A stretch of 64,000 nt of DNA from Bispira polyomma (lineage: Eukaryota): NCBI GenBank assembly GCA_965649765.1, contig OZ287750.1, positions 76,012,001 through 76,076,000 on the forward strand. The letters run 5' to 3'. How positions within the stretch are numbered: position 1 is the stretch's first letter; each line of letters opens with the position of its first letter. The position numbers and the translations under genes are program-made. This document shows positions 33,201-45,200 of this stretch, in pieces. The notes below the pieces were generated by a model. That model saw only the letters and a program-made list of their open reading frames with translations, searched no databases and was not told the origin of the DNA.

Positions 33201-36200
33201 CATGCACTAATGTTACAGACCAGCGTGAGCTATAGATCAGTTGTACCTTTGTATTTTCAGTATGTTGTGTCTGCGTGAGGAGTTGATGGTTGCTACTGGT
33301 ATCGGTTGGTTGCAGAGAATCCGGTGGGATGGTATGATTAATGGGGACATGACTATAGAGATCTCCTCCATCCCCTTCTCTGTAGATTTACAACAGTCTA
33401 GAGGTAAGAATACTTGCACTTAAACAACCTCTTTCTGTGTATTTATTGTGTGTAGATTTGTGTATAGTAGGGAATATAGGACGAAATCCCAATTGACGAA
33501 ATGTCCAAATCCTCTTGTGTACGAATTCCTCTGATCCAAATATTTGATTTGGTTAAATCTAAACACTGGTGTCGAATTTCTATTCATGTTAAATTTTAAG
33601 TATATTTAAGTGATGAGTTTGTGAAGCATTTACAGTACAGCCCTCTGATGTATTCTAAATAATTGCATAGTGTTTCAATACAAGTTATATTTCTAGCCTC
33701 TATTACACTATAAACATTTGTATATATTTACAGCCTCTCAGTTAACTTCTTTAGAAGAGTATGTCAAACAGTTAAAGTACAGCCCTCTGATGTACTATAA
33801 ACGTATATATTTTCAAGCTCTCAGTTAACCTCTTTAGAAGAGTATGTCAAACAGTTAAAGTACAGCCCTCTGATGTACTATAAACATTTGTATATATTTT
33901 CAACCTCTCAGTTAACCTCTTTAGAAGAGTATGTCAAACAGTTAAAGTACAGCCCTCTGATGTACTATGAACACTTGTATATATTTTCAGCCTCTCAGTA
34001 TGTTAAACAGTTACAGTCCAGCCCTCTAATACACTATAAACATTTGTATATATTTACAGCCTCTCAGTTAACCTCTTCAGAAGAGTATGTCAAACAGTTA
34101 AAATACAGCCCTCTGATGTACTATAAACACTTGTATATATTTTCAACCTCTCAGTTAACCTGTTCAGAAGAGTATGTCAAACAGTTAAAGTACAGCCCTC
34201 TGATGTACTATAAACACTTGTATATATTTTTAGTCTCTCAGTTAACCTCTTCAGAAGAGTATGTCAAACAGTTACAGTCCAGCCCTCTGATGTACTATGA
34301 ACACTGGTATATATTTTCAGCCTCTCAGTATGTTAAACAGTTACAGTCCAGCCCTCTAATACACTACAAACACTTGTATATATTTACAGCCTCTCAGTTA
34401 ACCTCTTCAGAAGAGTATATCAAACAGTTACAGTACAGCCCTCCGATGTACTATAACACTTGTATATATTTACAACCTCTCAGTTAAGCTCTTCAGAAGA
34501 GTATGTCAAACAGTTACAGTCCAGCCCTCTGATGTACTGTAACACTTGTATATATTTTCAGCCTCTCAGTTAACCTCTTCAGAAGAGTATGTCAAACAGT
34601 TACAGTACAGCCCTCTGATGGGAGGCTTTGCTGTTGTTCTGGCCAGTGGTAAAGCAGCTTTTATTACCGCCAGCTCACTCAAATTTGAACCTCATGTAAG
34701 TTGAAACCATGGTGTGTACGTGTGGAAATCTACATGGAGACTGTAGATTTGATTGATTTTGGGTTTATCATCACTTTTAACAAATTGTATTGGTCATATA
34801 ACGATAGGTAGTTTTCAGTGCTGGAGGAAGCCAGTGTATATGTAGTGTCAAGATTCTACACTGGAAACTCTCGACCATTGGCAAATAACTGCCAACTTTC
34901 CCACTTAAAGTCCCGGTCGAGATTCAAACTGAGATGATAGAGATGGAAGGCGAATGTGAGATACCCTAAAGCAGTCAACTGTCAAATATATGCTCAGGAT
35001 TTGTTATAGTTATGGCCAGTGTTCTAAACTACCACCGAAACTTGCATGCCCAGTGGGCTGGTAACTCTTAAAAGTAACAAGCCCAATTCGAAAGTTCCTT
35101 TCCAGTAATCTTCACAAGATCAATATTTTATTTATTTTTTTTTTTTTTTTTATTGTTTTTTTTTTTTGACAAATAACATCACAACTACAGTTACACAAAA
35201 CAGTAAGACAATGTACAATACAATAATACACAATTACAATTTACATACAAAAAGTGACTATTTCTATAATACTAACTTTCACTCAGATAGATGAATAATT
35301 TTTAAATTACAAATACAGTTCCACAAAACATAAACGACAATAGTACAATACAATAATTACAACTTACATACAAAAAATGTCTATTTCTATCTTATTTCAC
35401 TAATAAATACATGTACATCAATAATTTTTTAAATATAAAGGTACAATCAACTAATTCCGTTAAAGCAGCGTTATTAGCATTCATTTCAGTAAAAGTTTTT
35501 TTTACAATTGTTTAAGGTATTTCCAAAACATTGTTTAAATTTTTCCAGATCACCCCTTGAATTATAGAGGTTGCGGAGAAGTTGAAGTTTATTCTTGATA
35601 AGTAGCAAATATTCAGAAAAAAGGGTTATTTTGTTTGTTTGCTTTTTCTTGTTTCTAAACCATTTACCAACTAAGAGTAAATAGTTAATTAAAAGTAATT
35701 TATCATCTTGAGTAAAAACCATACCTAATAAAACCTCACATACTCTAAATCTGAACTTTAAATCTAGGTTGTTTGAGATCCACAGTTCTAGCTTTTTCCA
35801 AAATTGATTAGATTGTTTACAAGCAAATAAATGATGTTCTAAAGTATCTACAGTCTTAATCTCACAGTATTGACAAAAAGATGTTTCAACTATTTTCCAT
35901 TTGAACATATTATACCGACAATTTAGAGTTCTATTAAGGATCTTATACTGGAAAGTTTGAAGATATGGTTCTGATGTAGTAATATAAACTAACTTAAAAT
36001 AGATTTTCAATCCATTGCTTCTAGAAATGGATAAAGGTCTATCCAAGCTTCAAGCGAAGTTGGAGGCTCGCATTTACTGTAAACAATATTCCAGTACAAA
36101 TGGTTGTTTTTTATGTTTTCTATTGGTTTTATAATGTTATTAATACACAATGATATTTTATAGTTACTTTTCATTTGATCCAAGGTATTGAGAGATTTCA

Positions 36201-39200
36201 ATTTAGACCACCATTTAGTTGGAACTGCCTTAATGATTCCATAATACTGTAATATGGATATTTTGGGGGATAGTTTTAAAGCAAAATTTTCATATGTTAA
36301 GATGGTTCCGTTGGGGTTAATTAAGTCAATTAACTTCGTACATAAAAGATCGTGATTGTTATTCACCATAGTCAGTTCAATACAAGAATTATTTATAAGA
36401 ATGAACTTATTATAAAAAAGATATTCATTTAATATTTCGTGAATAGTAAATGGCTTGTTTGTTTTTATTGAAAACCATGAGTTCAAAAGTTGTTGGTAAA
36501 ATTTTGTCTTTGCTAGTTGATATTTTCTAGTCGGTAACTTAAAGTCAAAGAAATCTTTACCTAACCCTATCAGTGACCAAGACAATACTTTCCATCTTTT
36601 ATTAGTTCCATCAAATAAACGCTTTATCCATGAAATTTTCTGAGTGGCATGAATACTATATATATCTGGCATCTTTAAACCACCATTTTCCAGATCATTT
36701 ATTATTGTACTTCGCTTAACTCTTGGAGGTTTCCTTCTCCACAAAAAATGAAAAATTAGTCTGTTTATATTATCAAGCACATCAGTTGGTGTATATATAC
36801 TGCTAAATAAATGAAAAAATTTAGGTATAATTAGTGATTTAATTATAGCAATTTTTCCTTTCCATGATAGGTTCCTTGAACTCCAAATGTAGAGAGATTT
36901 TTCAACTGCTTTTAGTCGTTCTGTAAAATTTAAATCTATACTGCAATTTGAATTAAGTGAAAACCAGACACCAAGAGTTTTGAAAGATTTTGTTTGTATC
37001 CTTATATTTTTCAAGTTTTTTGGTAAATGGTTTGTTATCAAATGCAATGTTCCCAGAGGTATAATTTCCGTTTTTCCAACGTTCAACTTCAGGCCGGACT
37101 ATTCTCCGAATTCATTAAACAATTCTATTGCCCGTACTAATGATGTTATGTCTTTTAGAAAAAGGGTTGTGTCATCAGCTAACCGAATAATTTTAAATTC
37201 CTCCTCACCAATAGTAATTCCTTTAATTTTATCTTCTGATCTTATAGCAATGGCTATAGTTTCAGCAACTAAAATGAACAATAACGCAGATATCGGACAA
37301 CCCTGTCTTATTCCTCTACTCAATGAAAAGTATTTGGACAGATATCCATTGTTTGAGACGCATGAAAAAATGTTATTATACAATAATCTAATCCAATTTA
37401 TAAATTTTTCACCAAAACCAAAAGCCTTTAATGTTTGAAATAGAAAAGGCCATTCTACAGTGTCAAATGCTTTTTCAAAGTCTATAATAGTTAGGATCCC
37501 TGGTTGTTTTTTTAGAGATGAAAAATATATTATGTCATCTATAATTCTGATGTTTTCTCCTATAAATCTTCCTTTGACGTATCCGACTTGGTCCGGGTTT
37601 ACTAAATTCGAGATAACTTTTTGTAGCTTCATAGCTAATGCTTTCGCTAATATCTTGTAATCTGTTGCTAACAAGCTTACAGGTCTCCAAGATTTCAAGT
37701 ATCTCAAATCTTTTTCCGGTTTTGGTATTAATTTGAGTAAACCACGCCTTTGACTATCAGATAATTGACCATTCGAGAAAGAATACAAATAACTATCCAA
37801 GAGAGATTTTCGTAGATCTGACCAAAAATATTTGTAAAAATTAGTTGTGAACCCATCTGGTCCTGGTGATTTGTCGTTAGACATTGTCATTAAAGCTTTA
37901 TGTAAATCTTCTATGGTTAAATCTGTTTCACATTCATTTTTACCATTTGAATCTAATTTTGGAATGTAATCATTTTTCAAAAATCTGGTATCATTTTCGA
38001 GAATGATGCTTGGTTCAATCTTACTTTGGTATAAGTTTTTGTAAAACAGTTTCTGTTCTTCTAAAATTTTATTTGGTTGTACAATTTCTATTCCATTTGG
38101 TTGAATGATTTTTTTAATGTATTTAGTATTGTAATTCCGCTTTTCCAAATTTAAGAAATATTTTGAATTTTTTTCTCCATATTCAATCCACTTAGCTTTT
38201 GACCTTAAAATAACTCCATTCATTTTTGTAGTTTGCTTTGCCACTCATTTTTTAATGCCTGGTATTGATTAAATTTTTCTTCTGAATCATCTATATTTGT
38301 TTCTAGACTATGCAGTTGTTTTTCTAAATTTTGTTCTTTTTGTCTTTGTTCTTTTGCATTTTGGCCAGCATACGAAATAGTTTCAGTGCGGATTTGACAT
38401 TTAATATATTCCCATAATAAATTTTTATTTTCAAATTCCACAGTCTCTAAAACTGATGCTATGGTTTTTTTTATTAACGATACATATGCAATGTCATTTA
38501 ACAAGCTGTTGTTAAACTTCCAGACGCCTCTACCTCTATTTTGTGTGCCTAGTAATTCTAATTCAAGGACAACTATACTGTGATCAGAACGAAAACCAGG
38601 TTTTATCCTTGTACTTTTTGTTTGATATTCAAGAGAGTTTGAAATAATCAAATAATCTAAACGAGATTGAACAATTCCACAACAACTTCTTTCCCGCCTT
38701 GTAAACTGCGACAGTGCTTTATTTCTAAGTCTCCAAATATCAACCAATGAAAATTCTTCCATTAAACACTTTAAATTTTTACAGTAGTTAGTCATTACGT
38801 CTTTTTTGCCTCCTTTTTTATCCAAATTTTGATCTAAACACATATTAAAGTCTCCCCCCCAAATTAAATTTTTATCACTATAACAGTTTAATTTTTCTTT
38901 CAGGTTTTCAAGAAACTGGTTTTGAGCCAACTGTTTATCTTTAGTGGGTGCATAAACATTTATAATTGTAATATTATTCCCTTCTATGGTGCAATTTAAT
39001 ATGAGTAAACGCCCATCCTTATCACTGTCTAAATTGATACACTTTAAAGTTTGGTTTATAATTTGGTGGAATTAGGATGGCGACACCCCTACTATTAGAA
39101 CAACCATGTGCAAAATATATATCACCACCCCACTCTTTTGCCCAATATTTTTCATCAGAGGTTATAGAATGTGTTTCTTGTAATAAAATAATTTCTTTGT

Positions 39201-42200
39201 GCTTTTGTTTCAGCCAATTAAAAACTAGTTTTCTTTTGTTTTTGTCTCTGAGACCTCTACAATTAAAGGAGTTTATAAATGTAGACAATAAATTTTGAGC
39301 CATTTGTTATATAAAACTAAGATTTTGTTTTGCAATATGACATGATGATTTTCCCTTTGAGATTTAATACTAAATCCCATCTTATTACACCTAACGAAGC
39401 CAACCCTACTAACAGAAAGGACTCATTATTTAATGTACAGACATATATAATTGATACTGTGACAACATTTACACAGAGAACATAGAACAGAGAGGAACAA
39501 GCAAAAATATTTACAACAATAACTAAACTATTTTTACAGTTGACATTATTATTGTACATTGTAATAATAATGTCAGAACTGACCAAGTTAAATATTGTAA
39601 TTAGTTTTGTTCTATTATAGTAACTTGCACAGGTAAGTGATCAGTCACTTGAATTTATCAATAGAGATATAACTGGTAACTTATAAAAAGAGCATACACA
39701 ATTGATTTAGTCAACAATTTTATTGGTAAACGAAGTTAAGAAATTAGGCAAAGCCATGACACTCAAAATCTAGCAGAACAGACTTCTTAAAATTAGCTGT
39801 AGCTAATACTATGAGTATTTGAAAACATCATTCAATAAATGCAAAACGTGTAACAATTTTATTGCTGAACTAAGTTAAGAAATTAGGCAAAGCCATGATG
39901 CTCAAAATCTATAGGAACAGACTTACAATTAGCTGTAGCTAATAATATGACATAAGTATTTAAAAACATCATTCAATGAATGCAAAACGTGTAACATTTT
40001 TTTGTAAATGTTGGTTTAGCAATAGAGATACAACTGGTAACTTATAAAAAGAACATACATAATTGATTTAGTCAAAAATTTTATTGCTGAACTAAGTTAA
40101 GAAACTAGGCAAAGCCGTTACATTGAAAATCTAACAGAACAGAATTCTTAAAATTAGCACTCATCTAAAAATATGAGATGAGTATTTGAAAAAACATCGT
40201 TCAACAAATGCAAAACGTGTAACGTTTTTTGTAAATGTTGGTTTAGCAAAGATGATATTAGCTATGCTATAGAGGTAAACAAATTTGCACGTTTAGTGCA
40301 GGCCTCACTTTTTGAAAGCCCATACATATCAAAATCCAATGTTACCAGTTTCTTTTATTTTAAGAGTAGATATGTTTAAACAGGATTTACTTGACCTTTT
40401 TACAAAATGTAGAATGAGACAGTTTAAGTCAAAGGTCAAGCAACCACAGGTTGGCCCAGAAATGTTACTTGCATATCAAAATTAACTGTTACTAGTTACC
40501 TTTATTTTTGAATAGATATGTTAAAACAGGATTTACTTGACTTTTTACAAAATGTAATTAAATATAGAATGACACAGTTTTGAGTCAAATGTCTAGCAAA
40601 ATGTAATTGAATATAGAATGACACAGTTTGAGTCAAATGTCTAGCAACCACAGGTTAGTCCACCATTATGTAGTCAACTGAGAAAGTCTGTCTAGATGTT
40701 TATATCAAATATACTAATATGTCTCCATTAATATAACAAACTTTTATGGTTTTACTTACAAGCATTATTGTTCTTGCTGTCTTAACACATCTCTAAGTTT
40801 TGTGAGGATCTGCCGAAGTATGTTATCACCTTCCCAGCGACTTTCCTCCAGGATGCTTGGGTCAGACAGAGCAAGGCCGCAGGCAAAGAACTTGTCATTC
40901 CTATTTGCCTCTACCAATTTCCCGCAGCTTGATAACAGCTTCTCCTTGAGTGCCCTATTTTGGTTGAATTTAAGATAACATGCCTTTTCCATTGTGGGTC
41001 GTGCATGCTTTGACCATTTTGCTTCATCTAGACTTCTTATACGATGAGAGGCCGCCTTCATCTTTCTGAGATCTATACACCTTGCAATGGTAGTTGCAGT
41101 TGCATCGTCTTTGAAGAAGAGACTGTTCTGATAGAGATAGTATTGCTCTGAGCAAGAATAGATGCGTCCTTCCTCTTGGGAATGGTCCTGGATGAAAATT
41201 GCTCAGATAGCACTGCTGCCCAAAGAAGAATGTAGAATCCATTGCTGCAACATAACGTTCTCCCTTTACTGCCCAATGTAGGCTTGGAGGTAGCGAATCC
41301 AGGTTGTTTACTGTGTACTTACGGCCATTAATAAGTAGCACATCACCTTTAAGAGAGCATTTCGTCACTGTTCTGTCACGTTTAGCTGCTTTGAGACACG
41401 GAAGAAGAGTCCTTCTGTGGTCCCTAACACTCTCTGGGAAATCTTCACTGACGAAGTAGGAATTGTTTTTGAGAGACCAGCTTGCCTTCCAGACTTTGTC
41501 TCGATCCGGATAGAAATGAAAACGAGCGATTATCGTCCTCGGTCGTCTTGTAGAATGAGGGGATAAGTGCGGTGGCTTACCAAGCCTGTGGATCCTGGAA
41601 AATTGAATTTTACCAGGAACTTTCAGTGTGTCTCTGATGAACGCTGTGATTTTAGATTGTAGATCTTTGTTGGGTGATTCTGGGACTCCATCAAATAGAA
41701 GGTTTTCTCTTCTGGTGTAACTTTCTAAGCTGGCTAATTCATCCTGTATCCGTTGCATGGCTTTATCCTGCTCCTTCTTCGCACTTTCCAGATAATCACA
41801 CTTAATTTCAAGCTTTTTCAGTTCACTTTTCAGTTCTGTTTCCACTTTTTCAATGGGACGGTTGTCTTGCTTTATAGAATTCAATTCCTTTAATAAAAAA
41901 GAAAAGGCTTCCACAAACCACTCCGGTGCAGACTGCTGGATCTTTAATATTGTTTGATTTGCTTCTCTTTCAGTTATTACATCATCTTTGTTAGGTGAGG
42001 ATTTATTGTCTGTCCTTTTTATTGCCACTTGATCAGAGACAGGAGATACCAAAAGATCACTGGCTCCCCTCTTACTCATGACTCAATTTAGTTTATCTTG
42101 TATTATACTAGATCAAGGAATGTAAAGTGTATGAATAACTTTTAGTTGCCACAGCACTTTAAATGGTTCAATTCACCTTCATATAAATGTAAACATTTCC

Positions 42201-45200
42201 AAACATCAACAATAACAAAACACAAGCTCTGTTGTCAAAGTCATACATAAGCCACAGCACTTTAAATGGTTCAGTTCACCTTCATATAAGTGTAAACATT
42301 TTCAAACATCAACAATAACAGAACACAAGCTATGTTGTCAAAGTCATACAAAACACACCAGCAGATCCTCAGCTAATTCACTCATTTCAAGAAAACATCA
42401 GAAATACACAAGTGACATTGACCCAGTTTTAATGATTCACACTGACATTTCAATCACAAGCAAGTGTTTTTTCCTGCATATCCACTCCAACAGGGTCAGT
42501 TTCTATGCTTTTGTTAACACATGTTCTTTATAAAAACTCCAAGCCAACAAAGTTTATCAATAGACTATCTGAACACACTGTGTTGTACTTTGGCTGATAT
42601 TAATTGTTCAATGTGTTGGTCACTTCATGCATCAGTGCACACCATTGAATTATGTGGAGTTTTTTCACACAATTTTTTATATTTTCACAGAATATTTTCT
42701 TATTTTTCTCTTGTTTTTTCTTTCACAATCTAATAAAACTACAGCTTAATGTAGCCTATGTAATATACTCTTTATCTTGGTGCTAAAATTACACTGTAAA
42801 AACATACTTGTTTCATCTATTATAGCAAAATAGCACAGAACTTCCAAAACATGTCTGGCCTCTATGACACACACACATCATTTATTTTATACTGATATTC
42901 GTAGATGAAACTATATGTGACTACTTTTTATAGCAGAAAGACCAAAAGAAAAGTGTAAATCAAACATTTCTTGTAAATTTTTCAACATTTATTTTGAAAT
43001 ATCGAACGTCTTATTTTACTTAAATATTTATCCTTATTAACAAGCAAGATGTGCGGGCAACTCTGCAGAGATACCTGCCTAACCTAAAACTTGCAAGAAA
43101 TAGGCTTACTGGCAGGTGGCAGTTTTGAATACTGGTTATGGCTAACTTATACTTAATTTATACTTAGAATTATTGAATGTCGGGAGTCCAAAATTGATTC
43201 CAGTTCCAGAAAAATTTGAGTTGTATATATATATATTTTCGAATGAAATTTTTACTTATTTGTACTTGTGTAACATATACTACTCATTTAATCTGCAGGG
43301 AAAGATTTTTATGGGGGGGGGGGGGGGGGGGGGGATTTCCTGTTACATTGGTTCTACTTAAGGAGAGTCTGCTCACTCTGCTGTAGTAGAGACATCTATT
43401 ATCAGAACATGTTTCGAGAATAAAATTTCATTTTAGGCAATGGAAGGTTGATAAAATAGAAGAGCGTTGTCGGTATCAAACAATAGTAACACATTAATTT
43501 TGTGGAGAAGTAAAAAAGAGTTCATCAAATGAAATATTTTGATGATAGTAGTTTGAATTTTGGAGGTTCTACTGTGTACTCTGACCCTATTGTTTGGTAT
43601 ACAATAGACTTTGTTAACATCAATTTACTTTAAGCTAAATTCTACTGGTTGTTTTCTGGGTTTTTTAAAAACAAGTCACAAGCTTTATTTACACAAAAAC
43701 ATAAACTTTACACTGTTTGTTCTTGTATCACAAAAACAACACCATGTAACACAACAAAGACACTCCAAAAACAAACTGTAATAACTTGTATAACTAGTGA
43801 TTAGTATTCCCACAAATACCATTACATTATACAGTAGACTCTGTATAACTAGAACCTCCAATATCCATAGGATTTGATTCTAGCTATAGCTAAGTTACAC
43901 TTATACCTTCAAAAATACAGCATTTTCTGATGTTGGGACCTCAAAACTGGTTTCACTTATACCTAAAGTTGACTTACACTGGTTCTACTTTTACAGAGTC
44001 TACTGTAGTATGATGCTTCTACCACTTTCCAGTCTATTAAAATATTTGTGTACATCTTTTAGATTATAGCAGTTATGTTTGTAAATCAATTTAATTGTGA
44101 CGTTAAACACGTTTAGTCCAGAAATTGGACTAGTCCGGATTTTGGAACATTGACAACACTATGGACATTATTATTTTTTTTTTAACAACTCTGCTCTTTA
44201 ACAATATACTAGTGATTAACCACTGCAGTTAAGATATCATCTCTAAACATAAGATATTGTACCAAGATATTATAACATTGGACAACTTATGTGTACTATT
44301 TGTTACATTTACGCATAAATAGCATTATATAATAAACCTATTTACATTATGAAGAAAAAAGAGAAAAAACATTGGTCCAAAGTTAATTTTAGTTCCTTTG
44401 AATACTAAGACCAGGGGTTGTATTCACAAACATTCTTAGACTACAACTCTTAGAATTTTCTTAATCTCGGAAATAATGCTTTTAGCCAATCAATTTGCTT
44501 AAGACAAATATTTCAGAACTAGAATCTTTACTGATTCTAGTTAAAAAAGGTGAACTTTAGACAACAATGTCTAGATACTTTGGTTTTAAAACTTGTAACT
44601 TGTTATCTTACTGCAATAAGTCTACCTTAAATAGTGTTTCATGTAATTATTTTCTAGTTTGTTTCAGTTTTATCTACTGGTTTTGAAGCTGATGTTTGAT
44701 GTAATTTGAGATTTGCTACTCTTTATTTTGAAGTAGAATGATTGATCTAGGTCTGTAAAAATGACTTTGCTTTATGGTGTGGAAACATTTGAGAAATTTA
44801 TCCCTGATGTACAGAATATAAATATTATGATAAATGTTTTATATTGATGGCATGTTAAAAAAACCCACAATTGATCAAATGTTCCTCAACCATATCATGT
44901 CTGTTTATTCAAAACCAAATGTTATTTTACTAATTTAAAAATTTTAAAATGATCTTATCTTCTTTGTTTCTAGCAAGTTGTGGGTGTCTGGGCCCAGGAA
45001 GTGAGGGATGCCACTGCAGTAGCCGTCAACCACAAGTATACACTCATGGCTTTTGGCTGTAAAGAGTGAGTACTATAAACCAGCATGTATTGTACAAAGT
45101 TCACTTAAGGACCTAGTGTTGTGAAAATGAGTTGCCAATGTTTGCTAAATGAGTTAAACAAGGTATAAGTAGAATAAAATATGTGTGCTTTATACATTTG

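What the first reader, a model, noticed from the sequence alone, without database searches (positions are those of the whole stretch)
40765..42079. LINE ORF1 fused to a NADAR/YbiA domain: candidate retrotransposon-encoded anti-ADP-ribosylation module
SEEN: the ORF track splits this into a 351-aa and a 98-aa ORF. Deleting one G of the GGG at 41178-41180 joins them into a 437-aa protein: L1-type ORF1 (coiled coil, [18 protein letters not shown]) followed at ~41230-40765 by [149 protein letters not shown]. This is collinear with E. coli YbiA motifs as I recall them (FSNF, SEHYF..QKF, KFEQH, LVE...D..WG, GKNRLG.LL..LR). It lies inside a complete 5'UTR-ORF1-ORF2-poly(A) unit bounded by a split MITE, so it moved as part of the LINE. 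KNOWN: NADAR-superfamily enzymes are N-glycosidases. YbiA acts on riboflavin intermediates, and bacterial/phage NADARs remove ADP-ribose from guanine in ssDNA, reversing DarT1. PARP-family proteins act on L1 retrotransposition, and guanine-DNA ADP-ribosyltransferases (pierisin, clam CARP-1) exist in invertebrates. INFERENCE: multimeric ORF1p would coat the LINE RNP with an ADP-ribose eraser that protects RNA/cDNA from a host ADP-ribosylation defence, analogous to viral macrodomains. I do not know of a characterisation of ORF1-NADAR LINEs, but I could not search.
Basis: partly seen in the sequence, partly recalled or inferred. Interest (0 to 1): 0.93.

Follow-up and report, generated by a model that had tools for sequence, protein, structure and literature searches.

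The report
Dead LINE copy with ORF1-NADAR fusion
This is a broken copy of a young, very abundant jumping gene (an L1/Tx1-type LINE). Its RNA-binding ORF1 protein ends in a conserved NADAR enzyme domain, a kind that strips ADP-ribose off DNA and RNA bases. The fusion is real and under selection, has been noted in print for oyster LINEs, and its role is untested.

Summary
On the minus strand, 42079-40765 encodes an L1-type ORF1 (coiled coil, RRM, CTD) followed by a YbiA-family NADAR domain (Pfam E 4.7e-29). The frame is split at the base run 41178-41180.

The window copy is dead.
- It alone has one extra base in that run; 15 of 15 siblings lack it.
- It alone has the catalytic Lys replaced by Asn.
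- Its ORF2 has at least three frameshifts and a premature stop.

Two sibling copies encode an uninterrupted 437-aa ORF1-NADAR, and a second family (66% nt identity) encodes 438 aa.

The genome holds at least 2,147 candidate NADAR loci. About 60 of the 150 scored lie in open frames of 400 aa or more. The same ORF1-NADAR then ORF2 order occurs in distant relatives from other samples.

The catalytic Glu/Lys/Glu are kept in 78, 71 and 79 of 79 ORF1-linked domains. Between families the NADAR dN/dS is about 0.14-0.22.

Function is inferred only. Trimeric ORF1p probably carries an eraser of base-linked ADP-ribose onto LINE RNA or cDNA.

This is not new as a kind: a 2025 paper notes NADAR in ORF1 of oyster Tx1 LINEs. 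This scan had already found the fusion on other DNA of the same genome.

The parts
35127..42866 (-). Whole LINE copy (about 7.7 kb): 5'UTR, ORF1-NADAR, spacer, ORF2 remnants, 3'UTR, poly(A). An untemplated-looking GT run lies at 42867-42879, just 5' of it.
   Evidence: Colinear at 96-98% identity with eight sibling copies. About 12-bp target-site duplications are seen in siblings L031, L035 and L036.
42080..42866 (-). 5'UTR, about 790 nt. It contains a 103-bp unit repeated twice at 42148-42350.
   Evidence: Siblings L031, L035 and L036 start at the same point, and two of them carry about 12 more bases at the 5' end. Tandem repeat.
41240..42079 (-). ORF1 proper, residues 1-280: disordered N-terminus (1-35), long coiled-coil helix (53-123; nt 41923-41711), RRM and CTD (124-280; nt 41710-41240).
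   Evidence: AlphaFold2 model of the intact sibling, mean pLDDT 86.9. Foldseek hit to human L1 ORF1p trimer 2yko, E 5.7e-7, TM 0.70 on the target. Homotrimer model of residues 45-282: ipSAE 0.55 against best control 0.28.
40768..41239 (-). NADAR (YbiA-family) domain, residues 281-437 of the sibling protein. In the window it is split between two frames. The stop codon is at 40765-40767.
   Evidence: Pfam PF08719 E 4.7e-29 for the part after the break, and E 6e-36 over profile 4-163 in the intact sibling. TIGR02464 at 115 bits. 8bau TM 0.76 and 2b3w TM 0.75.
41178..41180 (-). Site of the frame break: a three-base run where all siblings have two bases.
   Evidence: 15 of 15 sibling copies that cover it have one base fewer. 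Public contigs laid on the stretch did not cover this place, so an assembly slip is not excluded.
41125..41127 (-). Codon of the catalytic lysine (equivalent to K50 of Phytophthora NADAR and K95 of E. coli C7 NADAR). The window has Asn (AAC); every sibling has Lys (AAA).
   Evidence: Codon table of copies. Alignment to 8bau. Residue roles from PMC11543638. Lys in 71 and Arg in 4 of 79 ORF1-linked domains.
41146..41148 (-). Codon of the first catalytic glutamate (equivalent to E43 of Phytophthora NADAR). It is kept in the window copy.
   Evidence: Glu in 78 of 79 ORF1-linked domains.
40909..40911 (-). Codon of the last-strand glutamate in the LVEAN motif (equivalent to E125 of Phytophthora NADAR), the hallmark of the YbiA family. 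It is kept in the window copy.
   Evidence: Glu in 79 of 79 ORF1-linked domains. Family definition from PMC11125620 and PMC11543638.
39304..40764 (-). Spacer of about 1.46 kb between ORF1 and ORF2, with internal diverged repeats. Siblings carry about 250 bp more at 40635.
   Evidence: Self-similar BLAST rows and the sibling gap. A 49-bp unit repeated twice at 40548-40647.
35486..39303 (-). ORF2 remnants (AP endonuclease, reverse transcriptase, zf-RVT), broken into at least five open frames.
   Evidence: Pfam Exo_endo_phos, RVT_1 (E 4.9e-33) and zf-RVT. Lesions against the intact 1268-aa sibling ORF2 of L033: +1 near 39045, -4 near 38235, TAG at 37099, -1 near 35999; 98.4% nt identity.
35127..35485 (-). 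3'UTR and poly(A) tail. The A-rich tail lies at 35127-35167.
   Evidence: All siblings end in the same A-rich tail.
42880..43137 (.). 5' flank: part of a short repeated element that ends at the LINE junction. One arm of a terminal inverted repeat lies at 43115-43135.
   Evidence: 378 candidate loci in the genome match 43137-42905 at 82-89% identity. Inverted repeat.
35016..35126 (.). 3' flank: presumed other part of the same short element, with the inverted-repeat partner at 35016-35037.
   Evidence: 18 of 21 complementary bases with 43115-43135. No unsplit copy was seen, so the 'split MITE' stays a likely reading only.

Best explanation
The window holds a decayed copy of a young, poly(A)-tailed L1/Tx1-type LINE. 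In this lineage the ORF1 protein has four parts: a disordered N-terminus, a trimerising coiled coil, an RRM, and a CTD followed directly by a YbiA-family NADAR hydrolase domain.

Shown here:
- The fusion is real and is one uninterrupted frame in sibling copies.
- It travels with ORF2 as one unit.
- It occurs in thousands of loci of this genome and in many diverged lineages elsewhere.
- It keeps the catalytic Glu/Lys/Glu under purifying selection.
- The window copy itself is inactive: a private frameshift, the catalytic Lys changed to Asn, and a broken ORF2.

Inferred mechanism: ORF1p binds its own RNA in cis as a trimer, so each LINE particle carries many NADAR active sites next to the RNA template, the nascent cDNA and the single-stranded target DNA. 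There the domain would hydrolyse the N-glycosidic bond between ADP-ribose and guanine or cytosine bases, the activity shown for YbiA-type and animal NADARs on ssDNA and ssRNA. This would clear a modification that blocks reverse transcription or marks the nucleic acid as damaged. The likeliest writers are host pierisin/CARP-1-type transferases, whose homologues are reported mainly from bivalves.

My odds: about 0.97 for the identity and the selection. About 0.45 for base de-ADP-ribosylation of element-bound nucleic acid as the selected function.
For: - Domain identity: Pfam NADAR E 4.7e-29 in the window and 6e-36 in an intact sibling. TIGR02464 at 115 bits against a cut-off of 73.7. Foldseek 8bau E 2.1e-10, TM 0.76; 2b3w TM 0.75; human L1 ORF1p 2yko E 5.7e-7, TM 0.70.
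- One frame in nature: 437-aa frames in L002 and L004, 438 aa in the second family L022.
- One unit: colinearity, poly(A) and target-site duplications.
- Spread in this genome: 2,147 first-look NADAR candidates. All 150 scored are above the Pfam cut-off, and about 60 lie in open frames of 400 aa or more.
- Spread elsewhere: 43 database homologues at 28-60% identity, 40 of them with PF08719 on record. Three contigs from other samples have APE-RT ORF2 downstream. 43 of the best 150 cluster representatives have the ORF1 core just upstream of NADAR.
- Selection: NADAR dN/dS of 0.14-0.22 between families and near 1 between young copies. Catalytic residues kept in 78, 71 (+4 Arg) and 79 of 79 domains.
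- Trimer: ipSAE 0.55 against best control 0.28, with heptad-spaced contacts over residues 50-125. The runs agree in at least 90% of their contacts and the partner's pLDDT is at least 76. The mark was reached by 21 of 30 proteins solved as pairs of one chain and 0 of 23 solved as single chains; a pass may come from memory of L1 ORF1p.
- Biochemistry of the family: all tested NADARs, YbiA-type and a sponge enzyme included, remove ADP-ribose from guanine. YbiA-type ones also remove it from cytosine, on ssDNA and ssRNA (PMC11125620, PMC12945103). CARP-1 homologues are reported mainly in Bivalvia (PMC12945103).
- Context of close relatives: NADAR fused to ADP_ribosyl_GH, to a MavL-like ADP-ribosylhydrolase, to RNase T, and inserted in an LTR-retroelement Pol.
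Against: - No enzyme activity, substrate or host transferase was tested.
- A search of this genome for Pfam Enterotoxin_a found nothing. It also rang in no control genome, so it says nothing about CARP-1-like genes.
- Base ADP-ribosylation has not been shown inside animal cells; PMC12945103 says it may simply be undiscovered.
- The best NCBIfam model is named for a small-molecule role, riboflavin-intermediate N-glycosidase.
- In PMC11125620, NADARs outside their own toxin context often failed to rescue cells from DarT1, so substrate specificity cannot be read from the fold.
- No public RNA run held the stretch, so expression is not shown.
- dS between families is saturated (1.4-2.3), so the dN/dS values are rough.
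- The NADAR tree is a FastTree on 154 columns. It does not resolve one capture from several.
Confidence: 0.5

Rival explanations
1. The NADAR domain serves the element's own RNA handling and is not a counter-defence. It would process an NAD- or ADP-ribose-derived group on LINE RNA, such as an NAD or ADP-ribose cap or a product of RNA end processing, and so tune translation, stability or priming.
For: PMC12477816 proposes that NADAR domains in retrotransposons process the RNA intermediates of transposition. The NADAR superfamily was first predicted to act in NAD/ADP-ribose-linked RNA processing (cited in PMC11543638). A close relative is fused to an RNase T exonuclease. ORF1p is an RNA-binding protein.
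Against: In the table of PMC12945103, ADP-ribose on 5' or 3' phosphates of RNA and DNA is removed by macrodomains, PARG and ARH3. NADARs are not listed for these ends. No NADAR activity on caps is reported in the papers I read.
Confidence: 0.2
2. The domain acts on something other than nucleic acid. One option is reactive riboflavin-pathway or other N-glycosidic small molecules, as for E. coli YbiA. The other is ADP-ribose on proteins, for example PARP marks on ORF1p, ORF2p or repair factors at the nick made by ORF2.
For: The best NCBIfam hit is TIGR02464, 'riboflavin biosynthesis intermediates N-glycosidase'. The catalytic set is that of the YbiA family.
Against: A housekeeping small-molecule role gives no reason for fusion to a cis-acting RNA chaperone, nor for retention in at least 43 diverged LINE lineages plus an LTR Pol. 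No NADAR is reported to reverse protein ADP-ribosylation in the papers read.
Confidence: 0.12
3. The domain is kept as a binding module, a reader of ADP-ribose or of nucleic acid, and not as an enzyme.
For: ADP-ribose-binding folds are often reused as readers; this is general knowledge, not tested here. The domain sits directly after the nucleic-acid-binding CTD.
Against: The three residues needed for catalysis, not only for binding, are almost invariant: Glu 78 of 79, Lys 71 of 79 plus 4 Arg, Glu 79 of 79. In PMC11543638, mutating these residues abolishes activity.
Confidence: 0.05
4. The fusion is of no consequence: a passenger domain, an annotation artefact, or a chance juxtaposition in this copy only.
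For: The window copy itself is frameshifted and carries Asn at the catalytic Lys.
Against: Uninterrupted frames exist in siblings and in a family at 66% nt identity. The genome has thousands of loci. The same order is found in other samples. dN/dS is well below 1 between families.
Confidence: 0.02

Closest known systems
ORF1 proteins of Tx1 LINE families of Crassostrea gigas in Repbase, noted to carry YbiA-family NADAR domains (PMC12477816, Genome Biol 2025)
   Same: The same kind of thing: an L1/Tx1-group LINE whose ORF1 holds a YbiA-family NADAR domain. Function is unknown in both.
   Different: That paper gives one sentence and a supplementary alignment. It gives no copy numbers, no selection test, no structure and no catalytic-residue survey. 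I could not compare sequences because Repbase is not at hand. Whether this genome is an oyster or another mollusc is unknown to me.
Human LINE-1 ORF1p (PDB 2yko, 2ykp)
   Same: Coiled coil, RRM and CTD in the same order. Foldseek E 5.7e-7, TM 0.70 on the target. A parallel trimer is predicted. ORF2 has APE, RT and a zinc motif; the element has poly(A) and target-site duplications.
   Different: Sequence identity is only about 20%, and Pfam Transposase_22 does not match. Human ORF1p ends after the CTD and has no enzyme domain. The spacer to ORF2 here is about 1.5 kb.
YbiA-family NADARs: E. coli YbiA (2b3w), Chondromyces crocatus YbiA; and Phytophthora nicotianae NADAR (8bau)
   Same: Same fold (TM 0.75-0.76) and the same catalytic Glu, Lys and last-strand Glu. 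TIGR02464 is matched above its cut-off.
   Different: Those are free-standing proteins, in some bacteria paired with a toxin (YarT). Here the domain is the C-terminal module of a retrotransposon RNA chaperone. Activity is untested.
DarG1-type NADAR antitoxins of DarTG1 and phage orphan NADARs (PMC11543638, PMC11825919)
   Same: These give the closest analogy for the proposed way of working. A mobile element (a phage) carries a NADAR that removes guanine ADP-ribose put on its DNA by a host defence enzyme.
   Different: This domain is not a member of either group. The last-strand catalytic residue is Glu, where DarG1 has Asp and phage NADARs have His. No transferase gene lies next to it. The host is an animal.
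[quoted passage not shown]
   Same: Retroelements that captured a YbiA-family NADAR. In my tree the NADAR of P0117, from the same 90% cluster as P0197, falls on the same side of a branch as all ORF1-linked ones.
   Different: The host protein differs (Pol, between RNase H and integrase in P0197) and so does the element class.
Viral macrodomains (e.g. coronavirus Mac1)
   Same: A genetic parasite carries an ADP-ribose eraser fused to its replication machinery. The resemblance is in the proposed way of working only.
   Different: The fold is unrelated. Macrodomains act on protein-linked and terminal-phosphate-linked ADP-ribose and are not reported for guanine or cytosine N-linked ADP-ribose (table in PMC12945103).

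Membership tests
NADAR superfamily, YbiA family | Sequence match to Pfam PF08719 and NCBIfam TIGR02464 above the curated cut-offs | tested here: met
   PF08719: 102 bits in the window piece and 124.6 bits in the intact sibling, cut-off 35.1. TIGR02464: 115.1 bits, cut-off 73.7.
NADAR superfamily, YbiA family | YbiA fold (helical core flanked by two small sheets) | tested here: met
   AlphaFold2 model with pLDDT above 90 over most of residues 282-437. Foldseek 8bau TM 0.76 and 2b3w TM 0.75 on the target.
NADAR superfamily, YbiA family | Catalytic Glu and Lys (E43 and K50 of Phytophthora NADAR), plus Glu in the last strand (E125), which separates the YbiA family from DarG1-type (Asp) and phage (His) NADARs | tested here: met
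   E311, K318 and E390 in sibling copies. They are kept in 78, 71 (+4 Arg) and 79 of 79 ORF1-linked domains. The window copy itself has Asn at K318.
NADAR superfamily, YbiA family | N-glycosidase or ADP-ribosyl hydrolase activity | not testable with these tools
   Needs purified protein and ADP-ribosylated oligonucleotides.
L1-group LINE (L1/Tx1) with type II ORF1 | ORF1 with coiled coil, RRM and CTD | tested here: met
   Foldseek hits to 2yko, 2ykp, 2ykq and 2ldy. Helix at residues 53-123. Trimer model 0.55 against control 0.28. Pfam Transposase_22 itself does not match.
L1-group LINE (L1/Tx1) with type II ORF1 | ORF2 with AP endonuclease, reverse transcriptase and a C-terminal zinc motif; poly(A) tail; target-site duplications | tested here: met
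   Exo_endo_phos, RVT_1 and zf-RVT. Intact 1268-aa ORF2 in sibling L033. Poly(A) and about 12-bp duplications.
Tx1 clade specifically | Placement of the RT domain within Tx1 in a phylogeny with reference elements; often site-specific insertion | not tested
   No reference LINE set (Repbase) is at hand. The flanks of the copies differ, so insertion is not site-specific. The clade name rests on PMC12477816 for the oyster relatives.
DarTG1 toxin-antitoxin (DarG1-type NADAR) | NADAR encoded next to a DarT1 transferase, with Asp in the last strand | tested here: not met
   The neighbour is LINE ORF2, with no transferase. The last-strand residue is Glu.

The most novel reading that the evidence does not exclude
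Molluscs, and perhaps other invertebrates, restrict mobile elements by ADP-ribosylating guanine or cytosine in their RNA, cDNA or DNA, with CARP-1-type transferases as the likely writers. Unrelated elements have each captured a NADAR eraser as a counter-measure: L1/Tx1 LINEs in ORF1, LTR elements in Pol, and possibly Polintons in their polymerase according to unchecked notes of this scan. That would be an animal counterpart of the phage NADAR against DarT1 conflict.
Probability: 0.2. Interest if true: 0.85.

Novelty: new member of a known kind. Interest (0 to 1): 0.5.

Why it matters
No physiological role is known for animal NADARs (PMC11125620), and base-linked ADP-ribosylation has not been shown inside animal cells (PMC12945103). 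Here a selfish element keeps a catalytically complete NADAR welded to the protein that coats its own RNA. It does so in thousands of copies and in dozens of diverged lineages. That is strong indirect evidence that something NADAR-sensitive happens to retroelement nucleic acids in these animals.

It turns a vague question into a bench test: does nucleic-acid ADP-ribosylation act as genome defence in animals? The test needs natural proteins, defined ADP-ribosylated oligonucleotides, and a group of animals that is also reported to hold the CARP-1 transferases.

The window's own copy is ordinary junk. The value lies in the family.

Tried and rejected
- Expression: no public RNA run holds the stretch. 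This says nothing either way.
- Reads on the frame break: contigs of three public runs, laid at 99% likeness, did not cover 40805-41414. The extra base could be neither confirmed nor shown to be an assembly slip.
- Host transferase: Pfam Enterotoxin_a in the window's genome found nothing and rang in no control genome, so it is uninformative. I had no profile or sequence for CARP-1 and typed none from memory.
- One capture or several: the FastTree of 213 NADAR domains puts all 80 ORF1-linked ones on one side of a branch (support 94). That side also holds tandem-NADAR proteins and short singles. The label needs 17 changes, so origin and number of captures stay open.
- Taxon of the relatives: the database hits for ORF1-NADAR and ORF2 carry no organism names. 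Only the tandem-NADAR protein P0044 is named, from Haliotis rufescens.
- A shared frameshift subfamily was rejected. L007 and L012 end in the same alternative frame as the window copy, but through different lesions (+7 and -53 bases).
- Site-specific insertion was rejected, because the flanks of the copies differ.
- I built no consensus and no mended frame. Natural intact sibling frames were used instead.
- The supplementary files of PMC12477816 that are held as text did not name the oyster families.
Full report
**What is in the window.**
On the minus strand an ATG at 42079 opens a 351-aa frame, and a 98-aa frame ends at 40765. The two are separated by a change of frame at the three-base run 41178-41180.

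The stretch after the break (window:40768-41178:-) matches Pfam NADAR PF08719 at E 4.7e-29. That is 102 bits against a cut-off of 35.1, covering profile positions 33-163 of 163. The missing first 30 positions lie in the other frame, just before the break. The N-terminal 300 residues match no Pfam family beyond coiled-coil noise.

**The break is private to this copy.**
The window's genome (1.035 Gb) holds at least eight full-length copies of this stretch at 97-98% identity and many 5'-truncated ones. It also holds a second family at about 66% nucleotide identity.
- All 15 siblings that cover the run have one base fewer there.
- Two siblings (L002, L004) encode an uninterrupted 437-aa protein. 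The second family (L022) encodes 438 aa.
- The intact sibling matches NADAR over profile 4-163 at E 6e-36. It matches NCBIfam TIGR02464 at 115 bits against a cut-off of 73.7.
- Two other copies end in the same alternative frame as the window, but through different lesions (+7 and -53 bases). There is no frameshifted subfamily.
- Public contigs did not cover the site, so an assembly slip in the run is not excluded.

The window copy is dead in any case. It alone has Asn (AAC, 41127-41125) where every sibling has the catalytic Lys. Compared with the intact 1268-aa ORF2 of sibling L033, its ORF2 has +1 near 39045, -4 near 38235, a TAG at 37099 and -1 near 35999.

**The unit.**
Eight siblings are colinear with the window from about 42866 to 35127. 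In order along the minus strand the parts are:
- a 5'UTR of about 790 nt with a 103-bp duplication;
- ORF1-NADAR;
- a spacer of about 1.5 kb with internal repeats;
- ORF2 with AP endonuclease, reverse transcriptase and zf-RVT;
- a 3'UTR and poly(A).

Three siblings show target-site duplications of about 12 bp in unrelated flanks, so insertion is not site-specific.

The 5' flank belongs to a repeat with 378 candidate loci that starts at a 21-nt sequence. The inverted partner of that sequence (18 of 21) lies about 100 bp beyond the poly(A).

**Structure.**
An AlphaFold2 model of the intact sibling, built on an alignment of 29 relatives, has mean pLDDT 86.9. It shows:
- a disordered N-terminus;
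- one long helix (53-123);
- an RRM-like domain and a CTD (124-280);
- a compact C-terminal domain (282-437).

Foldseek finds Phytophthora NADAR 8bau (E 2.1e-10, TM 0.76 on the target) and E. coli YbiA 2b3w (TM 0.75) for the C-terminal domain. It finds the human LINE-1 ORF1p trimer 2yko (E 5.7e-7, TM 0.70) for the rest.

A three-copy model of residues 45-282 scored ipSAE 0.55 against 0.28 for the best of three controls.
- Contacts are spaced in heptads along residues 50-125.
- The runs agree in at least 90% of their contacts, and the partner's pLDDT is at least 76.
- The mark was reached by 21 of 30 proteins solved as pairs of one chain and by 0 of 23 solved as single chains.
- The calibration used two copies, and the pass may come from memory of L1 ORF1p.

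**Catalytic residues.**
Phytophthora E43, K50 and E125 correspond to E88, K95 and D171 in E. coli C7 NADAR. They are the residues whose change abolishes guanine de-ADP-ribosylation. A Glu in the last strand defines the YbiA family (PMC11543638, PMC11125620).

By alignment to 8bau they correspond to E311, K318 and E390 of the sibling protein. Among 79 ORF1-linked NADAR domains from the databases:
- E311 is Glu in 78;
- K318 is Lys in 71 and Arg in 4;
- E390 is Glu in all 79.

**Spread and selection.**
- The Pfam NADAR profile finds 2,147 first-look candidates in this genome. All 150 that were scored exceed the cut-off (E at most 5e-37). By my count about 60 lie in open frames of 400 aa or more without a stop.
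- A word-indexed protein search found 43 relatives at 28-60% identity, 40 of them with PF08719 on record.
- Three contigs from other samples show the same order, ORF1-NADAR then APE-RT ORF2.
- An exhaustive search with the domain found 8,850 NADAR proteins at E up to 0.001. Of the best 150 cluster representatives, 43 have the ORF1 RRM-CTD core directly upstream.
- Between families, dN/dS of the NADAR part is 0.14-0.22 and that of RRM-CTD is below 0.1. dS is saturated, so these are rough. Between two young copies it is near 1, as expected for decay after insertion.

**Context of the nearest relatives.**
In a FastTree of 213 domains, all 80 ORF1-linked ones lie on one side of a branch (support 94). 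That side also holds:
- some tandem-NADAR proteins;
- short singles;
- the domain of P0117, whose longer cluster mate P0197 is an LTR-retroelement Pol (protease, RT, RNase H, NADAR, integrase).

Other close relatives are fused to ADP_ribosyl_GH, to a MavL-like ADP-ribosylhydrolase with a PUB domain, or to RNase T. These partners point to ADP-ribose and nucleic acids, and away from riboflavin chemistry. The tree is too weak to count captures.

**How it most likely works.**
Shown: a catalytically complete YbiA-family NADAR is kept by selection at the C-terminus of a LINE ORF1p.

Inferred: L1-type ORF1p binds its own RNA in cis as a trimer and also binds single-stranded DNA; this is established for mammalian L1 and not tested here. 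The NADAR sites would therefore sit along the template RNA, the cDNA and the target strand.

Published enzymology shows that every NADAR tested removes ADP-ribose from guanine. That includes E. coli and Chondromyces YbiA and a sponge enzyme. YbiA-type enzymes also remove it from cytosine, on ssDNA and on ssRNA (PMC11125620, PMC12945103). The known writers of these marks in animals are the pierisin/CARP-1 transferases, and CARP-1 homologues are reported mainly from Bivalvia.

The simplest reading is an element-borne eraser of base ADP-ribosylation. I give it about 0.45.

Rivals are:
- an RNA-processing role for the element's own transcript, the suggestion of PMC12477816;
- action on proteins or small molecules;
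- a non-catalytic reader role.

I could not test for a transferase gene in this genome (one search is uninformative), nor for expression.

**Comparison with what is known.**
The fusion has been noted in print. PMC12477816 (2025) reports that ORF1 proteins of several Tx1 LINE families of the Pacific oyster in Repbase appear to hold YbiA-family NADAR domains, and that Ectocarpus Gypsy elements hold one in Pol. The role is unknown in both. I found no paper that characterises it.

This scan had already found the same fusion on other DNA of this genome. One follow-up (s1-576401) reached the same verdict. Other first-reader notes report NADAR-like domains on Polinton polymerases in the same genome. 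I did not check those.

The domain is a member of the YbiA family by sequence, fold and catalytic residues. It is not a DarG1-type antitoxin, because it has Glu where those have Asp and has no transferase neighbour. It is not related to macrodomains, which it may resemble only in role.

**Verdict.**
- Observation: confirmed.
- Interpretation: partly supported.
- Novelty: a new member of a known but uncharacterised kind.

The window copy is ordinary debris. The family is a good experimental lead. I built no consensus and no mended frame. All protein work used natural intact sibling frames or the window's pieces apart.

Noticed in passing
P0044 (protein from the databases; no window coordinates): Some animals have giant proteins made of tandem NADAR domains. 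P0044 is Haliotis rufescens LOC124129589: 4,240 aa with 7 NADAR domains, the last five spaced 642 aa apart. Others have 2-6 domains (P0045, P0046, P0048, P0055, P0061). Their role is unknown.
   Followed up: partly
P0197 / P0117 (database proteins): An LTR-retroelement Pol has NADAR inserted between RNase H and integrase (protease, RT, RNase H, NADAR at 857-1003, integrase). In the tree its NADAR falls with the LINE ORF1-linked domains. This hints at exchange or repeated capture among retroelements.
   Followed up: partly
P0106, P0069, P0064 (database proteins): Close NADAR relatives are fused to other ADP-ribose or nucleic-acid enzymes. P0106 has NADAR, PUB and a MavL-like ADP-ribosylhydrolase. 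P0069 has two NADAR domains and ADP_ribosyl_GH. P0064 has two NADAR domains and an RNase T exonuclease.
   Followed up: no
window 42880-43137 and 35016-35126: The LINE seems to have landed inside a short element of about 370 bp with 21-nt terminal inverted repeats. The 5' part has 378 candidate relatives in the genome. A different, more abundant repeat (2,826 candidates) lies at about 34748-34958.
   Followed up: partly
window 39304-40764; siblings L031-L037 about 2445-2697: The ORF1-ORF2 spacer is unusually long (about 1.5-1.7 kb) and is built of diverged internal repeats. The window lacks about 250 bp that siblings have at 40635. Its function is unknown.
   Followed up: no
window 42867-42879; L036, L037 5' junctions: Several copies have a (GT)n run or other extra bases between the target-site duplication and the first base of the element. 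This suggests untemplated or microhomology-mediated 5' joining.
   Followed up: no
same genome, other windows (scan notes s1-596202, s1-579532, s1-596207 and others): First-reader notes report Polinton protein-primed DNA polymerases fused to a NADAR-like domain in this genome. If true, a third class of mobile element carries the domain. I did not check this.
   Followed up: no
L031 (G000:C6:57742964-57752963): This sibling sits in a locally repeated flank: similar sequence lies on both sides beyond the target-site duplication. Its ORF2 frame is 1166 aa, against 1268 aa in L033.
   Followed up: no
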